Source of the DNA: Stylophora pistillata
Taxonomy: Eukaryota
DNA length: 64,000 nt
Assembly: GCF_002571385.2 (NCBI RefSeq)
Contig: NW_019218142.1
Coordinates: 102,209 to 166,208, forward strand
Direction of reading: 5' to 3'
In this document: piece after piece, positions 6,201 to 14,000 of the stretch
Position numbering within the stretch: the first letter of the stretch is position 1
Layout: every line of letters begins with the position of its first letter
Program-made: the position numbers and the translations under genes
Notes under the pieces: generated by a model
Told to the model about the DNA's origin: nothing
Seen by the model: only the letters and a program-made list of their open reading frames with translations
The model's database searches: none

Positions 6201-7368
6201 AAGAGTTAGATGTTACCTTGTCACTCGTTGGAAAGAGAAGAAGCAATGCACATGTCGGCTCAGGTAGCATAGCCAATAACTCAGGATCAAGTCCAAAAAC
6301 ATCAACAAAGCTCCACATTGGCTTCATACCAAGGCCTGTGACAAACTGTTTATAAACAACAATTAAGATAATAATTAAGAATTATTCAAAGAAGTAGAGG
6401 TCAGTCATTGCACCTCACTGAAACTGAAAAAAACTAATTTATTTCTGTCAATATACCAAAAATTGGTCGCAAATTAAACTGCTGATGCACAATTTTGTCT
6501 CTTCAGCTGCTTGGAGGCAAATAGTACTTGTTTGTCACTTCCATACCAGCCAATCAGAACTCAAGAAAAGCATGACTCAACTGTGTGGTACATACTAATT
6601 CCAGTTAGTTAAAGCACACAGTGTTCCTACTTGCAATTACAGGTTCTAACACTGGGGAAGAGCCAGGAAAGATTTCTGTGTGACCCAAATTATTCTATAA
6701 CAGAGTGGCAGTCCCAAAGGCAATGTACTGTTTTTGCTATAATTGTTCTCTTTATCTATGAACTGTAAGCATAATACGTTATATGGCAATCTTGTCTCAA
6801 GCCGATTTATGGCGATGAATTTAGTTTTTCACTCTTTTATTTTTCTACTCACTTAAACAACAACATCGTGACAAATACTATGAAACTGAAATTTTTGACA
6901 GGGATGGGTGAAGATATAAACAATTCTTCATCTCACATAAAATTCATAACCAAGGTGCATAAATGTATTTAAAAACGATGACGTTAATTCGCAAGTTATT
7001 AGAATAATATTTGCACACATAGTTACAACTGATTTGTATGTATATTTAGTGTAGGCAACAACCGTGGAATTTTTCCACGATCGATCGACGCAAGATTTTC
7101 TCGCACTAATAAATATTATCCAGTCAAGTTTCCACATCACTTGAGCTACATCACATAAGGAACTAATTTAAAGTGTACTTACCTTGTTCATAACCTTTGA
7201 AGCAATTTGAATGACAGGAAATCAGGAATTTTGCAAAATGAATGAACAATGCAAAATCAAGTTAATCAAGGGGATCTATTTGCATGATTATGGACAAAAC
7301 ACACATTGGCAACAGACAATAGTTAATCTTACATCCGGATTTGATTCTAAAGGTAGCCATCGAACCAT
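284..7368 (-). CDS. UCHL3: Ubiquitin C-terminal hydrolase, UCH-L3/L1 family (9 exons in window; final exon lies left of position 1)
   Basis: Phase-consistent GT-AG exons: 7368-7333 ([12 protein letters not shown]), 7194-7183 (VMNK), 6345-6217 ([23 protein letters not shown]), 4577-4527, 4442-4337 ([18 protein letters not shown], catalytic Cys), 3639-3557, 3397-3350 ([11 protein letters not shown]), 731-656 ([13 protein letters not shown], catalytic His), 342-284 (DGRK..PINHG). All peptidase C12 motifs are present. Confidence 0.95.
1142..3298 (-). mobile_element. Decayed, 5'-truncated L2/CR1-clade LINE in UCHL3 intron 7
   Basis: APE endonuclease motifs (LYRPP, GDFN, TLDL, SDH) in ORF 2438-3298. 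Frameshifted RT start near 1750-1890 ([23 protein letters not shown]). No central RT core seen. L2-type C-terminus ([35 protein letters not shown]) in ORF 1339-1704, followed by a (TAT)n tail at 1142-1170. Confidence 0.9.
4025..4070 (+). ncRNA. Type I hammerhead ribozyme (intact core) at the 3' end of an ~165-bp retrozyme-like insert (~3907-4073)
   Basis: Stem I ACUGCA (4025-4030) pairs with UGCGGU (4065-4070). Core CUGAUGA at 4031-4037. Stem II GGCC-cagaa-GGCC at 4038-4050. GAAA follows, then a palindromic stem III ACAGUACUGU. GUC cleavage triplet, predicted cut after C4064. Confidence 0.88.
4906..5080. mobile_element. Non-autonomous DNA transposon (hAT-like MITE); same family as 61994-62169
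   Basis: CAAGG/CAGGG-type terminal inverted repeats. The internal sequence matches the reverse complement of 61994-62169. Flanks are taatg/taatt. Confidence 0.65.
5571..5867. repeat. Palindromic interspersed element nested in another repeat
   Basis: Long hairpin aacaattatttgc..ggtgaatattgtcgaataatcccc / ggggattattcgacaatattcacc..gcgaataattgtt at 5578-5681. agtataatttcagagctga (5685) is inverted at ~5849-5867. Confidence 0.6.
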
Positions 7369-7520
7369 TTTTTTGGCGCTCAAAAGTATAACGATGGTTC
7401 TCCTTATTTCTACTTCCTTCTTGTCTGGGAATCTGGAAACTGGGGAAATGAGTCCGCAAGTTTTTTTCAGCAGCCTTACTTCGAAAATACGAAGCATTGT
7501 GGGTAATTTTGCTTTCCAAG
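7369..7520. promoter_or_regulatory. Compact bidirectional promoter between UCHL3 and the PAM17-like gene
   Basis: The divergent ATGs (7368 and 7521) are only 152 bp apart. A YY1/Kozak-like CAAGATGGCGGC overlaps the + strand start. Confidence 0.7.
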
Positions 7521-10357
7521 ATGGCGGCTGGTAGTGTGAGAACTTTTCGTAACTTTTTCAACGGAAAAAGAACTCTAGTCGTTCTCCGTACAGGCTTGAA
7601 ATCCAGTATACCATGTATGGCTATATTGAATCGTCCATATTGTGACAGCTCTCCCGAAAGTGATCCTGATGGCTTGAAAGAACGTTCTCCGACTATTGTG
7701 AGTAGTCCGTTATTCAGCGGTCAGAAAATCACGCCGAAAAGATTCCAGCTATCATTTGAAGAGTTCCAGCAGCTGAGGAGAAAGTTGCGCACAAAGCAGA
7801 AGCTGGCCGGTTTGCCGATTGGTGTGACATTTCTGTTAGCATCGAGCACCATCACTGCTTACATGTTCCCAAATATTTTCGATGCTACTCCGGAGCAGAT
7901 TGAACCGATATTGTATGTTAAGTTTCCTTTAACCCTTTGCAGCCTAATATCAGTATGCATATTCTCCATACTGTTCTCTATTCATTTCTAAACTTCAGAA
8001 TACCCGGCCACTCATTTACATGTCATTGAATAAGAATAGCATCTATTGTGTTATGCTTCATTCTTCAAAGCCTCCCGACACATGTAAATGATGTGGACGG
8101 GTACTCTGAAGTTGCTCCATTTCTTTTGGTACTGACAAGGAGAATTAGGTTACAATCAAAGCGTCTAAGCTTTGCGATCGTTTCCTTTATTCACATGTAA
8201 TTATTTTAATCAATGATTCAGCAGTATTACTGTTAGGAGAATTTAGATGCTGGTCACTCATAGTGTTTAAAGGGTTGAAATACCTTTATGTAAGTAAGAA
8301 CTCATTTTCACTCATCACAGCTCTCTTTTTTCAATTTTTTTTTCTCCATTTCCTAAACCCTTACTTTTTGGGTGTATTTTTCACTTTCCACTCTTAAAGT
8401 TATTTTTTCTCTCCCAGCATTTCTGTTTGGTAAATTCAACTGCCCACAGTGGTTTGTATGGGGCTATAAGTTCAGTGTCTAAAACTGTCAGCTCTATGTG
8501 ATAAACTAACTTGACATCTGAGAAAGGTTGGGAAGTCTGAAGTAAAGTGCTTATAATCTCATTTTCACTCCCCTATTTTTTCATCCAATCACTTCTCATT
8601 CCTGTGTGTCGTTTATTGTCTCTTCATGTGTTTACAGAGGAATGACAAAACTTACGTTACATGCAGAAATTTGGGCAGATCAGTGAATAGAAAGTGGGAA
8701 TGGTAGCAAATGAAACTTGGACCCATTCCATGGTCCCTCAAACCATGGACCCTCAAACTTGGACCCATTCCATGATTAAGCAACTTCTATAGCATACATG
8801 AGAGCAGACCTCTTTACTTGCTCAATAACACAACAAGACCACATTACATATGAAATTAAAGTGTATATTGGAGAGTCATGTTGTTTCCTTTCTATTTTCA
8901 GAGGAATGGACCCAATAATTTTCTGTGGTTTGTGTGGCGTGGCCAGTGCTGGTGTTGGGTTTGCTGCTGGAACTGTGGCATTTAAATCAGTTTGGAGGTT
9001 GTTTAACAAGGACTTGGCCCAAAATATGCAAGAGGTATGTTTCTTTGCTGACCTTTAATTGTAAATTTATAGTTTGCAAGTACTGGTGAAAAAAATTTTT
9101 AACAGGGGAGGTGGTGGACAGGCATTATAAAAGAAGGGAAAAATGATATTGTATCTTCCCATATGTCCCTACCCCTGATCTATCTACTCTTGATCTCAAT
9201 CAAACTGAGACTCCTTCACTGCAGGCTGTAAAACTTTTTTCATTGTTCTCTTATTGTTGAAATATACAGTTGTACATGTTTTAAGGGGCACCATATAAAA
9301 TGGTCACTAGTGGTTTCAAAACAAGCTGGCGACTGCTAGAGTTCCAACGGCTACTTGATTGTATGTGGCCGGCTACTCTGGTCATAACAGTCGGCTTGTG
9401 ACAAACAATCTTGATTATCACAGCCACCTACTTTTCCAGAGTCGGCCTCCTACTTCAAGACATTTTGAAACCCGTGGGTCACCCTTTATGAAGGTGTTGG
9501 TTTTTCAAAGTTGTTCAAAGGGTGGGTGACACTGTTCAACAGATTAATTGCTATCTAGTGGAGGAGTGTGAACAAAATTTATTGCGCTAACCAGCAGATA
9601 GAGATTTCTCCAGTTGATGTAATATTTCAAAAACGAGTGCGAGTGCTTCATCGGGGTTTCCAAACACGAGAAAACTGATCAGTGAAAGCATGAGGCCTAT
9701 GGCCTTGTGCTTTTATTGTTTTTGTGTGTTTGAAAACCCAGATGAAACACGAAGCACGGTTTTTGAAATTGCTTCTCAATCGTGCATCATTAGCCAAGAA
9801 CAATGAAAAAATTCTGACTGATTTTGGCATCAGTGGGGTTTGACATTTTATCAAGCTCTAGGGTTTGATATTTCATCAAATTATAGTGGAAAAGCCTCTG
9901 TCCAGTGTTTCATCGGGGTTTCTAAATACACATGTGGCCAAATTGGCATATCGTGATTGGTTTGTAACGTCATGAATTATTAATGAGTTTGAGAAAGTAT
10001 TATCCATCCTTTGAACAACTGGGGCCAGATAGAGATTTATTCAGTAGATAGCTTTATCCATCTTTTCATCAACTGGGGGCTGAACTTTAGTTGCAACAAT
10101 TTATGTTAAGAAAGAAAAAAATGTTGAGACTTCTTTCTTTTTATCATGTTTTGTAGCGTGAAGCTGATTTCTTGGAAAGGGTAGCAGCCAGAAGAGCTTC
10201 ATCAAACAGTAAATTTGAAGATGACTATTATGGGGAAAGTATTAAGAATGTTAGTGACTACAGGCAGTGGCTAAGAGAGCAACAGAAAAAACAAAATATC
10301 ACGGATAAATACGAAAACAAGGAACAATCTAAAGAACTTAAAACAGAAGCTGCTTGA
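7521..10357 (+). CDS. PAM17: Pam17-family presequence translocase-associated motor subunit, 241 aa, 3 exons (7521-7912, 8902-9034, 10157-10357)
   Basis: Phase-consistent GT-AG splicing, 726 nt. The first 41 residues are acid-free and Arg-rich, ending RPYC (presequence-like). Then LSFEEFQQLRRK, TM1, ILGMDPII, a Gly-rich TM2, READFLERV and DYYGESIKNVSDYRQWLREQ, which match the recalled fungal Pam17 signature (GLDP..; DYYGEKI.S..DYRQWLRDQ). Confidence 0.85.
7929..8278. mobile_element. TTAA-flanked (piggyBac-like) MITE with a nested small TIR element (~7991-8113)
   Basis: Termini are ttaaCCCTT...AAGGGttga. The body (atcagtatgcatattctccatactgttctc..gacaaggagaat) recurs at ~4085, ~5270, ~52520 and elsewhere. 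Nested inverted repeat aacttcagaatacccg..catttacatgt / acatgtaaatg..cgggtactctgaagtt. Confidence 0.6.
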
Positions 10358-11033
10358 ATGACAACAAAAGAATCAGGAAAGTTCTCTGAGAACTGTTGAA
10401 TATCCCCAAAATCATTGACAGATGAATATTCCTCCATTGCCTTCTTTAAGGGAATCCACAAGATAGTCAGTGAGGTGTTCTGTGTAGTTCACCTTTAGAG
10501 TAATTTGTATGACAAGATATTTAGGGCTCCATTGCATGTATGTCATCCAAGGACTTTGTTTGTGACAGTATTTTATTGCTTCAAAAATAAAAAGCACATG
10601 TTTATTGAGGAGAATAATGATGAGGACAAAATGGAGGACTGTACATTATTTCTAAGTTTTTTTTTCCGCAATCCGTTGATAACAGTTGAAAATTGATCTG
10701 CATTGTAGGTTATTATGTTCTGGGTACTATGAATCCAAAAATTACCGACACCGCGTTAAAAAATCAATTTATTTTATTAAACTTTTGCCACTGTGAAATG
10801 TTATTGTAATGTTTGAAGTGTCTGCCTCGTATATTACAAAAATTCATGAATTGTAGATGAAATGATTGTGATAAGCTTCTTCTCACGATGCATGACATCC
10901 AAATAGCCACCAAAAAGTAAGAGTTTTTACATTTTCATTCGCTTACGACAAAATTAAGTTTGTTTTTCTCTCTCTTTTTTTTTTTTTTACAATAATGTGT
11001 GGATACAACTAAACGAAAGTGAGATAAATTACT

Positions 11034-14000
11034 TTATCCATTGTGTGCAGTATGTGATCCAGTACTTGTTCCAGGCCCTGCATTACCAGAAGAAGACTGT
11101 TTGGGAACAAAACTTGTGAAAACCTTTCCATTGATTACGAAGGTATCCTCCGTTTTGGGGATATCCCTAGAAAAAAAGAGAACGAAAATAAACACTTATT
11201 TTACAATGAATAATAATAATAATAATAAAAACAACTAAATGTTTTTTATGGTGGAACTCCACCAGCTCGAAATGCTAAAGGATCAACTTCAAAACTGGGC
11301 CTGTGGTTGCACATTTTGCAAAACTGTTAGTTGATTTCGCCCACAAATGCTCTGTCGTCCTTTGGTTTGAGTTGTGATACAGTTTCTGAGCTGATATGCG
11401 ATTTGAAGCTGGGTTAGCTGCAGGAGAAGTATGTTTCAGAAACCATAACTTTTTTAACTCCACCATAAAATTGCATACAATTATGACACAACATGCGTTT
11501 TTAAATTCCCCCCAAGAGTATCCTGAAAGTTCGAATATTGTCTTCATGTGTACTACAAATTAAACCATGCGTGCCGCCATTTTGAATCAGCTTAGCAGCC
11601 TGGCTGCTCCTATTCTTCCCCTGTAATCTAGTTTCACAAATGGAAGCTACACTGAGAGGAATTCTTTACTCTAGTGATAAACTTTGCCATGAAGAAACAG
11701 CACATTTAAAGACAGTTTTTAACAGTTCAATTATTCTTTGGAATCTCAAAACGTGATAAGTAGTAAATTATCATAGTTTCCTTTTGATGACCTTTTCAAT
11801 TGCCTCAAATTTTGCTTCTCTTTAATTATTCTCTCGCCACAACTTTCATAATTCAAGGAGCTAAGGGCCCTAACAACTCCTAACATACAAGAGAAAAACA
11901 TTCGTACCGTGCTATACTGAAGCAGGGTGGTCTCCCTGTTTTACTCCGTTGCTTGACACAGTAGGAGCACAGACACCCCACGTGGGGATTTTCGCCATGA
12001 TCAAGTGCAGACCGACCACAGATCACGTTCCGGACAAACTGTATATCCATTTGAAAAGTGGGCTTCACAATATTCTTTGCAAAGCGTTTGGCATCCAAGC
12101 CAATCAACTGAGTAAAATAAAGATATTTCAGTGAAAATAATGGAGAATCAAAAAACGAATCCTTCGTAGGAAAATGGTTTTGGAAAGGACCACAACAAGA
12201 TATCGTACGAACCCAAGGCAAATTGGAGTTGAGTATCAGACCGTTTAGTAGTAATCATTATCATCATCGTCGTTACCACCATAGTAACAATGATAACGGT
12301 AATAGTGTTGTATTGACCCAGTAAAATAAAAGTTTTGTTCTTGTTGTGGCAGATGGTAACCACGAAATTCAACGGGGCGTTTAGATGTGGACCAAGAAGC
12401 GTAAAAGAAAAAATGCGATATTGCTTGAAAACAACTATTTGTTACGATCAGAAAAATATCATTATGAATTAAAATCGATTCTGAGCGAATATTTTCTCAA
12501 GCTATCTGTTTTGTTTTTCAGAATACTTACATATCTTTTGTAATCAGTTTGTTTTCTCAAATCTCTTGTAATCCTGTCCGAGCGCATAGTGGAGGCCACG
12601 ACCTGGATCGCGTCACTGAATGAGGGGTTGATATATTCCTTTAACAATTCCTTTATAACCTTAGGTCTTTCCTTATCTCTTTTCATTTTCTTTGGATCAA
12701 TAGGTGTTGGTAAAATGACGGCCTGTGCCAAAGCGACTTCCTCTGATAAAGAAGTGTCAGATCGCAGTGAAAGACCCTTACGGATAATACGTAGACGCTT
12801 GTTACGCTCAAAGTCACGTGCTTTGTCCATTGCCTCATCCAATATAATTGACTTGAACGAAACAACAACAACAAAAAAAATGCATGAATAAGAGAAAATA
12901 GAGGAATTTACTGTATAGAAAAGGGTACAATTTCATTTTGAGGACGTGGAAAAAAAAATTCAGTTTGACCTGCCAAAGAGGCGTTTTTTAGACGTTTTTG
13001 AGAAGATTTGAAAACGTGCGGATAGATTAGCGGTCCTTCACCTCCCCTACCCTTCGCGCTAACCACGCCCTTGGCTTAGCTCCCCTTGTAACGCTAAAAA
13101 GATTACACTTGCTCCAAAGTTGACAGATAGTCATTAGAAGTGTTAGTTGTATGTTGTGTTGTTGTTCCCCTTCATCTATCTTTCATTCCTCGTGTCCCCC
13201 TCCTTGGAATAATCTCTAGTGCGATAACCCAACCCCCCCCCCTAAAGAAAAAACGGCTGCTTCACAACATAAAAGTGCAGACTATGGTCTCATATATTAT
13301 TTATTTCATTTATGATCATCATCATCATCTCCAAACAGTTTGTATACATTCCAAAAGTTTCTGTGGTTACCTTTGCCAATAACACACTCTCCTCCAAGGA
13401 TTTCACTGTCATCTTCATTCGTTCCTTAATCACTCTTCTCTTCTCCCTGCTTCTATTAAGAGCCTGTTTATTCCTGACAAGGAATAAAGAGGCTCTTGAT
13501 AGAAGCAGGGAGACGAAGCTTTGGAGAATCTTAATAGAGGCTCTTAATAGAGACTCTTAAACAGGCTCTTAATAGAAGCAGGGACACGAAGCTTTGGAGA
13601 ATCACCAATCCACATGTGTGGATTGGTGATTCTCCAAAGCTTCGTGTCCACCAACCAGAGACTTGCCTGAATGAATTATTCAAAGTCAGACAACTTACCA
13701 CCTTACAATCGGAACTAAATTGTAAAATCTCAGTTGACACATCTGTCCTTATTTGATTACCGTACTTTGTTCTAACCTTTTCCAAATCCGTTGAAGATGA
13801 TGGACGGCTTGTCTGAGCAGGAGGCAGGGATGGTTCGCCTGCAGATCACACCATGCGTGTTATTACCAGAAAGATAATTATAAACTGACATTGTACTGAC
13901 TCATGAAATATAATAGCTACTTACATCAAGCAGTCGGAAGGCTGGTACAACCGTGGTGCTTATGTTGTATAACGAAAGATGTTTTGTCGCGAGCGAAGAA

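What the first reader, a model, noticed from the sequence alone, without database searches (positions are those of the whole stretch)
7521..10357. An intron-containing animal homolog of the mitochondrial import-motor subunit Pam17
Seen: a clean 3-exon, 241-aa ORF with a presequence-like N-terminus, two hydrophobic segments and the C-terminal DYYGE.I..V.DYRQWLR.Q motif. It lies 152 bp head-to-head with UCHL3, and its introns carry the same repeat families as neighbouring genes, so it is not a fungal contaminant contig. Known: Pam17 is a yeast PAM/TIM23 motor modulator, and vertebrates are described as lacking it. Inference: this lineage keeps a fungal-type PAM architecture, either ancestral in opisthokonts and lost in bilaterians or acquired long ago. 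The fungal SxSxxNPVP linker before DYYGE is replaced here by SSNSKFED.
Basis: partly seen in the sequence, partly recalled or inferred. Interest (0 to 1): 0.8.

Follow-up and report, generated by a model that had tools for sequence, protein, structure and literature searches.

The report
Coral Pam17 gene, real but annotated
This stony-coral gene is a genuine, expressed, intron-containing homolog of the yeast mitochondrial import-motor subunit Pam17, inherited from the common ancestor of animals and fungi, but public databases already name it PAM17, so only its evolutionary context is of modest interest.

Summary
Exons 7521-7912, 8902-9034 and 10157-10357 (+) encode 241 aa. Each exon hits Pfam Pam17 (PF08566) in collinear order. 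The identical database protein scores 131 bits against a cut-off of 25.4.

- **Expression:** RNA reads and four transcript contigs confirm both GT..AG junctions on the + strand.
- **Host origin:** The gene sits 152 bp head-to-head with a UCH (Peptidase_C12) gene. Its introns hold coral-specific dispersed repeats, so it is not a contaminant.
- **Selection:** dN/dS against Pocillopora is 0.11.
- **Vertical descent:** Fungi and Holozoa separate at 100/99 support, and the coral gene nests among hexacorals.
  - Both intron positions are shared with Nematostella, Trichoplax and the ichthyosporean Sphaeroforma. One is shared with a blastoclad fungus.
  - The UCH-Pam17 pair is kept in five cnidarian and placozoan genomes.

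Novelty fails. This exact protein is already on record as PAM17 (PFX19458.1, XP_022800347.1, Stylophora pistillata). Orthologs in Nematostella, Hydra, Trichoplax and Orbicella carry the same name. Reviews still call Pam17 "yeast-specific", so the literature lags the databases. No named bilaterian homolog appeared, but absence was not proven. Mitochondrial localisation and TIM23 association are inferred, not shown. The scan's earlier notes hold nothing on Pam17.

The parts
7369..7520 (.). 152-bp interval between the two divergent start codons; shared bidirectional promoter region
   Evidence: Sequence read. RNA of opposite strands on either side: UCH 5' contig ends at 7418-7423, Pam17 transcript contigs begin at 7519-7521.
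7517..7528 (+). [quoted passage not shown]
   Evidence: One match in the window against 0.01 expected. Consensus as printed in PMC3177215. The core AAGATGGCGGC is kept in Pocillopora and Orbicella. Its function in corals is inferred.
7521..7912 (+). Exon 1 (CDS residues 1-130 plus two bases of codon 131): presequence-like N-terminus, low-complexity linker, basic amphipathic stretch, first hydrophobic segment
   Evidence: Pfam Pam17 profile positions 12-55, 16.9 bits. RNA junction.
7913..8901 (+). Intron 1 (989 bp, phase 2, GT..AG), just before the conserved GMDP motif
   Evidence: Same position and phase in Nematostella, Trichoplax and Sphaeroforma.
7988..8119 (.). About 131-bp MITE-like dispersed element inside intron 1
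   Evidence: At least 40 scored copies (644 first-look candidates) at 94-99% identity on other contigs, with terminal inverted repeats. Very deep in RNA on both strands, with many loose ends.
8902..9034 (+). Exon 2 (residues 131-175): G-x-DP motif and second hydrophobic segment
   Evidence: Pfam Pam17 positions 67-109, 34.8 bits, over the cut-off on its own. Also.
9035..10156 (+). Intron 2 (1122 bp, phase 0, GT..AG), before R-E-A-D-F
   Evidence: Same position in Nematostella, Trichoplax, Sphaeroforma and the fungus Paraphysoderma.
9615..9990 (.). About 375-bp dispersed repeat with an internal inverted repeat inside intron 2
   Evidence: At least 40 copies at 81-96% identity on other contigs of the assembly.
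10157..10357 (+). Exon 3 coding part (residues 176-241 plus TGA): matrix-side helices and the DDYYGE...DYRQWLR motif
   Evidence: Pfam Pam17 positions 111-160, 52.8 bits. Also.
10358..11185 (+). 3' UTR with likely proximal (about 10600) and distal (about 11190) poly(A) sites
   Evidence: Transcript contigs end at 10756-11185. Depth falls after about 10575 and reaches zero after 11178. AATAAA at about 10584 and 11187.
7331..7423 (-). First exon (5' UTR plus start codon at 7368) of the divergent UCH-L (Peptidase_C12) gene
   Evidence: The orthologous neighbours in other species are 227-229-aa Peptidase_C12 products.

Best explanation
This is the nuclear gene for the coral (Stylophora pistillata) ortholog of Pam17, the small two-pass inner-membrane accessory subunit of the TIM23 presequence translocase and its import motor (PAM). 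The gene is transcribed from a compact bidirectional promoter shared with a UCH-L deubiquitinase gene. It is spliced at two ancient introns and translated from the first AUG, which sits in a TISU-type context behind a very short leader. The product most likely enters mitochondria through its basic N-terminal presequence. It would insert as a helical hairpin with both ends in the matrix. The net +5 segment before the first hydrophobic stretch and the acidic -4 loop after it fit that topology. As in yeast, it would then help the translocase hand matrix-bound precursors to the Hsp70 motor. The gene was inherited vertically from the opisthokont ancestor and is kept in sponges, placozoans and cnidarians. 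Shown here: gene structure, expression, family membership, purifying selection and vertical descent. Inferred: mitochondrial localisation, topology, TIM23 association and role in import.
For: - **Family membership:** Pfam Pam17 matches exon by exon in collinear order (16.9, 34.8 and 52.8 bits). The identical database protein scores 131.4 bits, E 3.9e-38.
- **Same protein as the public record:** It is letter-identical to XP_022800347.1.
- **Expression:** Splice junctions and + strand are shown by raw RNA reads and by four transcript contigs from separate runs.
- **Selection:** dN/dS is 0.11 over 240 codons against Pocillopora, computed exon by exon.
- **Conserved residues:** Invariant from yeasts to corals are G132, D134, F180, R188, D198, Y200, G201, Y210, R211 and W213.
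- **Structure:** Two hydrophobic segments and charge distribution. The AlphaFold2 model has mean pLDDT 81.7, with helices 79-115, 135-165, 167-187 and 207-240 and a disordered N-terminal 70 residues.
- **Phylogeny:** Fungi and Holozoa split at 100/99. The window gene pairs with Pocillopora at 100/99 and sits inside a scleractinian group at 99/97 and an anthozoan group at 93/94 (quick 73-row tree).
- **Introns:** Identical positions and phases in Nematostella, Trichoplax and Sphaeroforma. The second intron is shared with Paraphysoderma.
- **Synteny:** Head-to-head UCH neighbour in Nematostella, Trichoplax, Pocillopora and Orbicella.
- **Host repeats:** Coral-specific repeats lie in both introns.
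- **Partners:** Tim44, Pam16 and Romo1/Mgr2 exons are detected in the same assembly.
- **Yeast function and topology:** As described in PMC8346121, PMC5773037 and PMC12998175.
Against: There is no experimental evidence for localisation, cleavage of the presequence, topology or TIM23 binding in any animal. No solved structure of any Pam17 exists to compare with. Bilaterians run the same translocase without Pam17, so its role in cnidarians could be minor or altered. Assembled transcripts begin only 0-2 nt before the AUG. If that is the true 5' end, some ribosomes might start at Met33, which would give the 209-aa form used in the original GenBank model. TIM21 was not found by the exon-level search, though that result is inconclusive.
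Confidence: 0.88

Rival explanations
1. The gene is fungal in origin, either from a contaminant contig or from a recent horizontal transfer into the coral.
For: Pam17 is described as fungal or 'yeast-specific' in reviews. The nearest large clusters in the ESM Atlas are fungal.
Against: The gene lies on a 338-kb coral contig, 152 bp from an animal UCH gene. Both introns hold dispersed repeats found on dozens of other coral contigs. Intron positions and the UCH neighbour are shared with Nematostella and Trichoplax. The tree separates fungi from Holozoa at 100/99 and nests the gene in hexacorals. The Atlas holds only clusters of 50 or more members, so small animal clusters cannot appear there.
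Confidence: 0.01
2. It is a true Pam17-family protein, but in animals it has drifted to another inner-membrane role and no longer serves the TIM23 motor. That would explain why bilaterians could lose it without harm.
For: Pam17 is non-essential even in yeast. Bilaterians lack a recognisable homolog among named hits. The linker before the DYYGE motif differs between animals and Dikarya.
Against: The residues invariant across fungi and Holozoa are all kept. Purifying selection is strong. The predicted architecture is the same two-pass hairpin with a matrix-side C-terminal helix. Nothing points to a new domain or partner.
Confidence: 0.1
3. The locus is a decaying or untranslated remnant that is transcribed but not functional.
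For: A second, partial copy (exon 2 with intron flanks) lies on contig C508. The 5' leader is extremely short.
Against: The 241-codon frame is intact. dN/dS is 0.11. Spliced poly(A) RNA appears in many runs from 10 studies. The start context is conserved in three corals. The C508 piece is 95% identical, ends in an assembly gap and looks like a haplotig.
Confidence: 0.01

Closest known systems
Saccharomyces-type Pam17 (Fmp18), accessory subunit of the TIM23 translocase / PAM motor; Pfam PF08566
   Same: Profile match over positions 12-160 of 165. Presequence-like N-terminus, two hydrophobic segments joined by a loop with the invariant G-x-DP, and a C-terminal DYYGE...YRQWLR motif. Overall size is 190-250 aa. 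One intron position is shared with an early-branching fungus.
   Different: Only 19-27% identity to ascomycete and basidiomycete members. The linker before DYYGE is about 10 residues shorter and lacks the Dikarya SNPVP motif. There is a longer unstructured stretch between the presequence and the first helix. The gene has two introns and a bidirectional promoter shared with a UCH gene.
Already annotated cnidarian and placozoan PAM17 records: Stylophora PFX19458.1 / XP_022800347.1, Orbicella XP_020619846.1, and the Nematostella, Hydra and Trichoplax UniRef entries
   Same: The Stylophora RefSeq record is the same protein letter for letter. The others are 45-75% identical orthologs with the same introns and, except Hydra, the same UCH neighbour.
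   Different: The GenBank model PFX19458.1 starts at Met33 (209 aa). RNA evidence and the conserved start context favour the 241-aa form. The Hydra gene is intronless and has other neighbours.
Trypanosome TbTim20, a functional analogue discussed in PMC12998175
   Same: A non-essential translocase subunit that helps import of substrates sensitive to low membrane potential, the role ascribed to yeast Pam17.
   Different: Unrelated in sequence and located in the intermembrane space. It is mentioned only to show that the function recurs without homology.

Membership tests
Pam17 (Pfam PF08566) | Significant match to the family profile above the curated gathering score | tested here: met
   Exons score 16.9, 34.8 and 52.8 bits in collinear order. 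The identical full-length database protein scores 131.4 bits against a cut-off of 25.4, E 3.9e-38.
Pam17 (Pfam PF08566) | Two transmembrane segments separated by a short loop with the conserved G-x-DP | tested here: met
   Hydropathy peaks at 95-116 and 136-158. AlphaFold2 helices at 79-115 and 135-165 with pLDDT above 90. G132 and D134 are invariant across 16 fungal and holozoan sequences.
Pam17 (Pfam PF08566) | Conserved C-terminal matrix motif D-Y-Y-G-E ... Y-R-x-W-L-R | tested here: met
   D198, Y200, G201, Y210, R211 and W213 are invariant in alignment A3.
Pam17 (Pfam PF08566) | Cleavable N-terminal mitochondrial presequence | tested here: inconclusive
   The first 32 residues have 6 K/R, no D/E, 6 S/T and a helical hydrophobic moment of 0.71, which fits a presequence. 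No dedicated predictor or cleavage assay was available.
Pam17 (Pfam PF08566) | Orthology: groups with Pam17 of related organisms in a tree that follows the species tree | tested here: met
   Fungi and Holozoa split at 100/99. The window gene lies within Scleractinia and Anthozoa. Shared introns and shared synteny agree.
Pam17 (Pfam PF08566) | Inner-membrane localisation with both termini in the matrix; association with Tim17, Tim23 and Tim50; support of motor assembly | not testable with these tools
   Known for yeast only (PMC8346121, PMC5773037). The charge distribution (+5 before the first segment, -4 in the loop) fits the topology.

The most novel reading that the evidence does not exclude
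Pam17 is not a fungal invention. It is an ancestral opisthokont subunit of the presequence translocase, kept with its two original introns in ichthyosporeans, choanoflagellates, sponges, placozoans and cnidarians, and lost on the bilaterian stem. In early animals it became locked into a bidirectional gene pair with a UCH-L deubiquitinase. That pair has survived since the placozoan-cnidarian ancestor. Non-bilaterian animals would then be the only animals in which the Pam17-dependent, membrane-potential-sensitive import step can be studied.
Probability: 0.55. Interest if true: 0.4.

Novelty: already known. Interest (0 to 1): 0.3.

Why it matters
Reviews of mitochondrial import still list Pam17 as yeast- or fungus-specific and absent from humans and plants (PMC8346121, PMC3095331, PMC7050145). 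The databases, and the analyses here, show it across Holozoa, including three non-bilaterian animal phyla. That corrects a textbook simplification and places its loss after the cnidarian-bilaterian split. It also offers tractable animals (Nematostella, Hydra) for asking what the translocase gains from Pam17 and how bilaterians compensate for its loss. The gain is modest. The gene is non-essential in yeast, and its presence in cnidarians can be read off existing annotation.

Tried and rejected
- **Solved structures:** A profile search found only a chance hit (E 0.14). Foldseek of the model against the PDB gave nothing with E below 0.9. No Pam17 structure is on record.
- **ESM Atlas:** It returned only fungal Pam17 clusters, because it holds only large clusters. 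This says nothing about taxonomic range.
- **Literature:** Searches for Pam17 with bilateria, choanoflagellate or coral found no relevant paper. Two broad multi-term searches returned unrelated papers. Fukasawa et al. 2017 does not mention Pam17.
- **TIM21:** The exon-level search in the assembly found nothing, and its control rang nowhere, so it is inconclusive.
- **Rfam:** The only hit over the gene is a far sub-threshold MIR821 match (28.8 against 249 bits) inside the intron-2 repeat. I treat it as noise.
- **Upstream 5' exon or trans-spliced leader:** I considered this because an AG precedes the ATG. No joint or well-supported loose end was listed there, and the transcript contigs carry no extra letters. 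136 weaker loose ends were not shown, so it is not fully excluded.
- **Hypsizygus introns:** Mapping failed because the exons are too short for tblastn.
- **tblastn omission:** One search did not list exon 1 of the window. Searches cover it.
- **Spliced model:** Searches went exon by exon by reference. The full-length protein used later is the database record a tool returned (P0022). Junction checks and dN/dS were done exon by exon.
- **Complex prediction:** None was sent, since no partner sequence was available by reference.

Full report
**Observation**

The stretch 7521-10357 holds a three-exon gene on the + strand.
- Exon 1 is 7521-7912, exon 2 is 8902-9034, and exon 3 is 10157-10357 with TGA at 10355-10357.
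- Both introns are GT..AG. The first is phase 2 and the second phase 0.
The three exon translations were searched by reference.
- Each exon matches Pfam Pam17 (PF08566) in collinear order: profile positions 12-55 (16.9 bits), 67-109 (34.8 bits) and 111-160 (52.8 bits), against a cut-off of 25.4.

**Identity with the public record**

A protein search seeded with the open frame that contains exon 1 returned a cluster with the following members.
- XP_022800347.1, [quoted passage not shown], 241 aa.
- PFX19458.1, same name, 209 aa, starting at Met33.

The 241-aa record equals exon 1 + Leu + exon 2 + exon 3 letter for letter. It scores 131.4 bits (E 3.9e-38) on the Pam17 profile.

**Expression**

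- Four Logan contigs of 1.1-1.6 kb from four runs encode the exact protein. They map as 7519/7521-7912, 8902-9034 and 10157 onwards, reaching up to 11185.
- In raw RNA reads, junction 7912>8902 is carried by 38 reads (25 start points) in X24 and 9 in X21. Junction 9034>10157 is carried by 41 and 11 reads.
- All these reads have the first mate on the minus strand, so the RNA is on the + strand in the usual stranded libraries. The neighbouring UCH exon shows the opposite orientation.
- Twenty runs from ten studies hold the stretch, and ten of those runs are recorded as RNA.
- Depth suggests a proximal poly(A) site near 10600 and a distal one near 11190, each behind an AATAAA.

**5' end**

- All four transcript contigs begin 0-2 nt before the ATG. 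No upstream splice joint was listed.
- The start context CAAGATGGCGGC (7517-7528) is an exact match to the TISU consensus SAASATGGCGGC. It occurs once in the window against 0.01 expected.
- TISU is the element that directs accurate initiation on very short leaders and doubles as a YY1-dependent promoter element. It is enriched in genes of respiration and basic metabolism (PMC3177215).
- The core AAGATGGCGGC is kept at the orthologous start in Pocillopora and Orbicella, and Nematostella differs by one base. Most cnidarian orthologs begin Met-Ala.
- This favours Met1 over Met33. TISU function in a coral remains an inference.

**Protein anatomy**

- The first 32 residues have six K/R, no acidic residue and an amphipathic stretch.
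- Residues about 33-70 are low-complexity and modelled as disordered.
- The AlphaFold2 model (mean pLDDT 81.7; residues 70-241 mostly above 90) has helices 79-115, 135-165, 167-187 and 207-240.
- Hydropathy peaks lie at 95-116 and 136-158. The segment before the first peak has net charge +5, and the loop between them has net -4. This fits the matrix-in topology reported for yeast Pam17 (PMC8346121).
- Across 16 sequences from yeasts to corals the invariant residues are G132, D134, F180, R188, D198, Y200, G201, Y210, R211 and W213.
Dikarya have QSFSNPVP before DYYGE, while animals have a shorter S-SKFED.

**Not a contaminant or a pseudogene**

- Intron 1 holds a roughly 131-bp MITE-like element (7988-8119) with at least 40 scored copies at 94-99% identity on other contigs.
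- Intron 2 holds a roughly 375-bp repeat (9615-9990) with at least 40 copies at 81-96%.
- The start codon of a Peptidase_C12 (UCH-L) gene lies 152 bp away on the other strand.
- dN/dS against Pocillopora verrucosa, computed exon by exon, is 0.11 over 240 codons (dS 0.28, dN 0.031).

**Evolution**

- An exhaustive profile search of 1.84 billion representatives found 519 family members at E ≤ 0.001.
- Named members include the following.
  - Cnidaria: Stylophora, Pocillopora, Orbicella, Nematostella, Actinostola, Paramuricea, Aurelia and Hydra.
  - Placozoa and Porifera: Trichoplax and the sponge Oscarella pearsei.
  - Unicellular Holozoa: the choanoflagellates Salpingoeca macrocollata and Microstomoeca, Pigoraptor, and the ichthyosporeans Sphaeroforma and Creolimax.
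  - Many fungi, from Blastocladiomycota to yeasts.
- No named bilaterian or ctenophore appeared. The very conserved C-terminal words make a miss in annotated proteomes unlikely, but this is not proof of absence.
- A careful ML tree of 41 rows separates Fungi from Holozoa at 100/99. It places the window gene with Pocillopora (100/99), inside scleractinians (99/97) and anthozoans (93/94). Named Metazoa form one side of a branch, with weak support of 70/36. The quick 73-row tree agrees.
- Both introns sit at the same codon and phase in Stylophora, Nematostella, Trichoplax and Sphaeroforma arctica.
- The second intron is also shared with the blastoclad fungus Paraphysoderma. At least one intron therefore predates the fungus-holozoan split.
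- Hydra and two unnamed relatives have intronless genes.
- The head-to-head UCH neighbour is kept in Pocillopora, Orbicella, Nematostella and Trichoplax. It is not seen in Hydra or Sphaeroforma.
- All of this points to vertical descent from the opisthokont ancestor.

**Comparison with what is known**

- Reviews describe Pam17 as a non-essential two-pass inner-membrane protein. It is recruited by the activated TIM23 complex (via Tim50 and Tim17 loop 1) and acts before the ATP-driven step for precursors sensitive to membrane potential.
[quoted passage not shown] One survey says only that it was "found in opisthokonts".
- No paper in the library links Pam17 with bilaterians, choanoflagellates or corals.
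- The sequence databases, by contrast, already name this gene and its cnidarian and placozoan orthologs PAM17.
- The finding is therefore correct but already on record.

**Context in the assembly**

Exons matching Tim44, Pam16 and Romo1/Mgr2 are present. TIM21 was not detected by the exon-level search, which is inconclusive.

**Verdict**

This is a real, expressed, selectively maintained Pam17 ortholog of ancient vertical origin. Its function in the import motor is inferred from homology. Novelty is "already known", and interest is modest at 0.3.

Noticed in passing
G000 contig C508, about 80250-81636 (L003:775-2161): A 95.4%-identical copy of window 8374-9804 (Pam17 exon 2 with parts of both introns). 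It ends in an assembly gap on one side and inside the intron-2 repeat on the other, so it is probably an uncollapsed haplotig or a partial duplicate. Its synonymous variant at window 9019 (C>A) is also seen in RNA reads. In run X24 those reads show A (17/56) and G (39/56) but never the assembly's C.
   Followed up: partly
window 7988-8119 (intron 1): A young MITE-like element of about 131 bp with terminal inverted repeats. It has hundreds of candidate copies at 94-99% identity across the assembly and is extremely abundant in poly(A) RNA contigs on both strands.
   Followed up: partly
window 9615-9990 (intron 2): A dispersed repeat of about 375 bp with an internal inverted repeat and at least 40 copies at 81-96% identity. 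A far sub-threshold Rfam MIR821 match falls inside it and is taken as noise.
   Followed up: partly
window 7369-7520; L008, L009, L016, L017: The divergent UCH-L (Peptidase_C12) / Pam17 gene pair is conserved in Stylophora, Pocillopora, Orbicella, Nematostella and Trichoplax. This is a bidirectional pair that predates the cnidarian-placozoan split. It is absent around the intronless Hydra gene.
   Followed up: partly
window 7517-7528: An exact TISU / YY1-type element (CAAGATGGCGGC) spans the start codon of an mRNA whose assembled 5' end lies 0-2 nt upstream. The core is conserved in three scleractinians. TISU has been described in mammals, and its use in cnidarians is untested.
   Followed up: partly
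L010 (Hydra), L012, L013 (unnamed relatives): Pam17 genes without introns in Hydra and two unnamed relatives, against two ancient introns in anthozoans, Trichoplax and Sphaeroforma. This suggests intron loss or retrogene replacement in those lineages.
   Followed up: no
G000 contig C2964:1337-1747: A strong Tim44-domain match (131.9 bits) in a single 213-aa open frame on a very small contig. It may be a bacterial-type Tim44-like gene from an associated microbe rather than the coral's own Tim44, whose exon-level hit is on C333.
   Followed up: no
window 11034-11190: The distal part of the Pam17 3' UTR (+ strand RNA up to about 11185) overlaps the start of the region that another first-stage note (s1-783892) assigns to an orphan receptor-like gene. 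Any model of that gene should allow for this.
   Followed up: no
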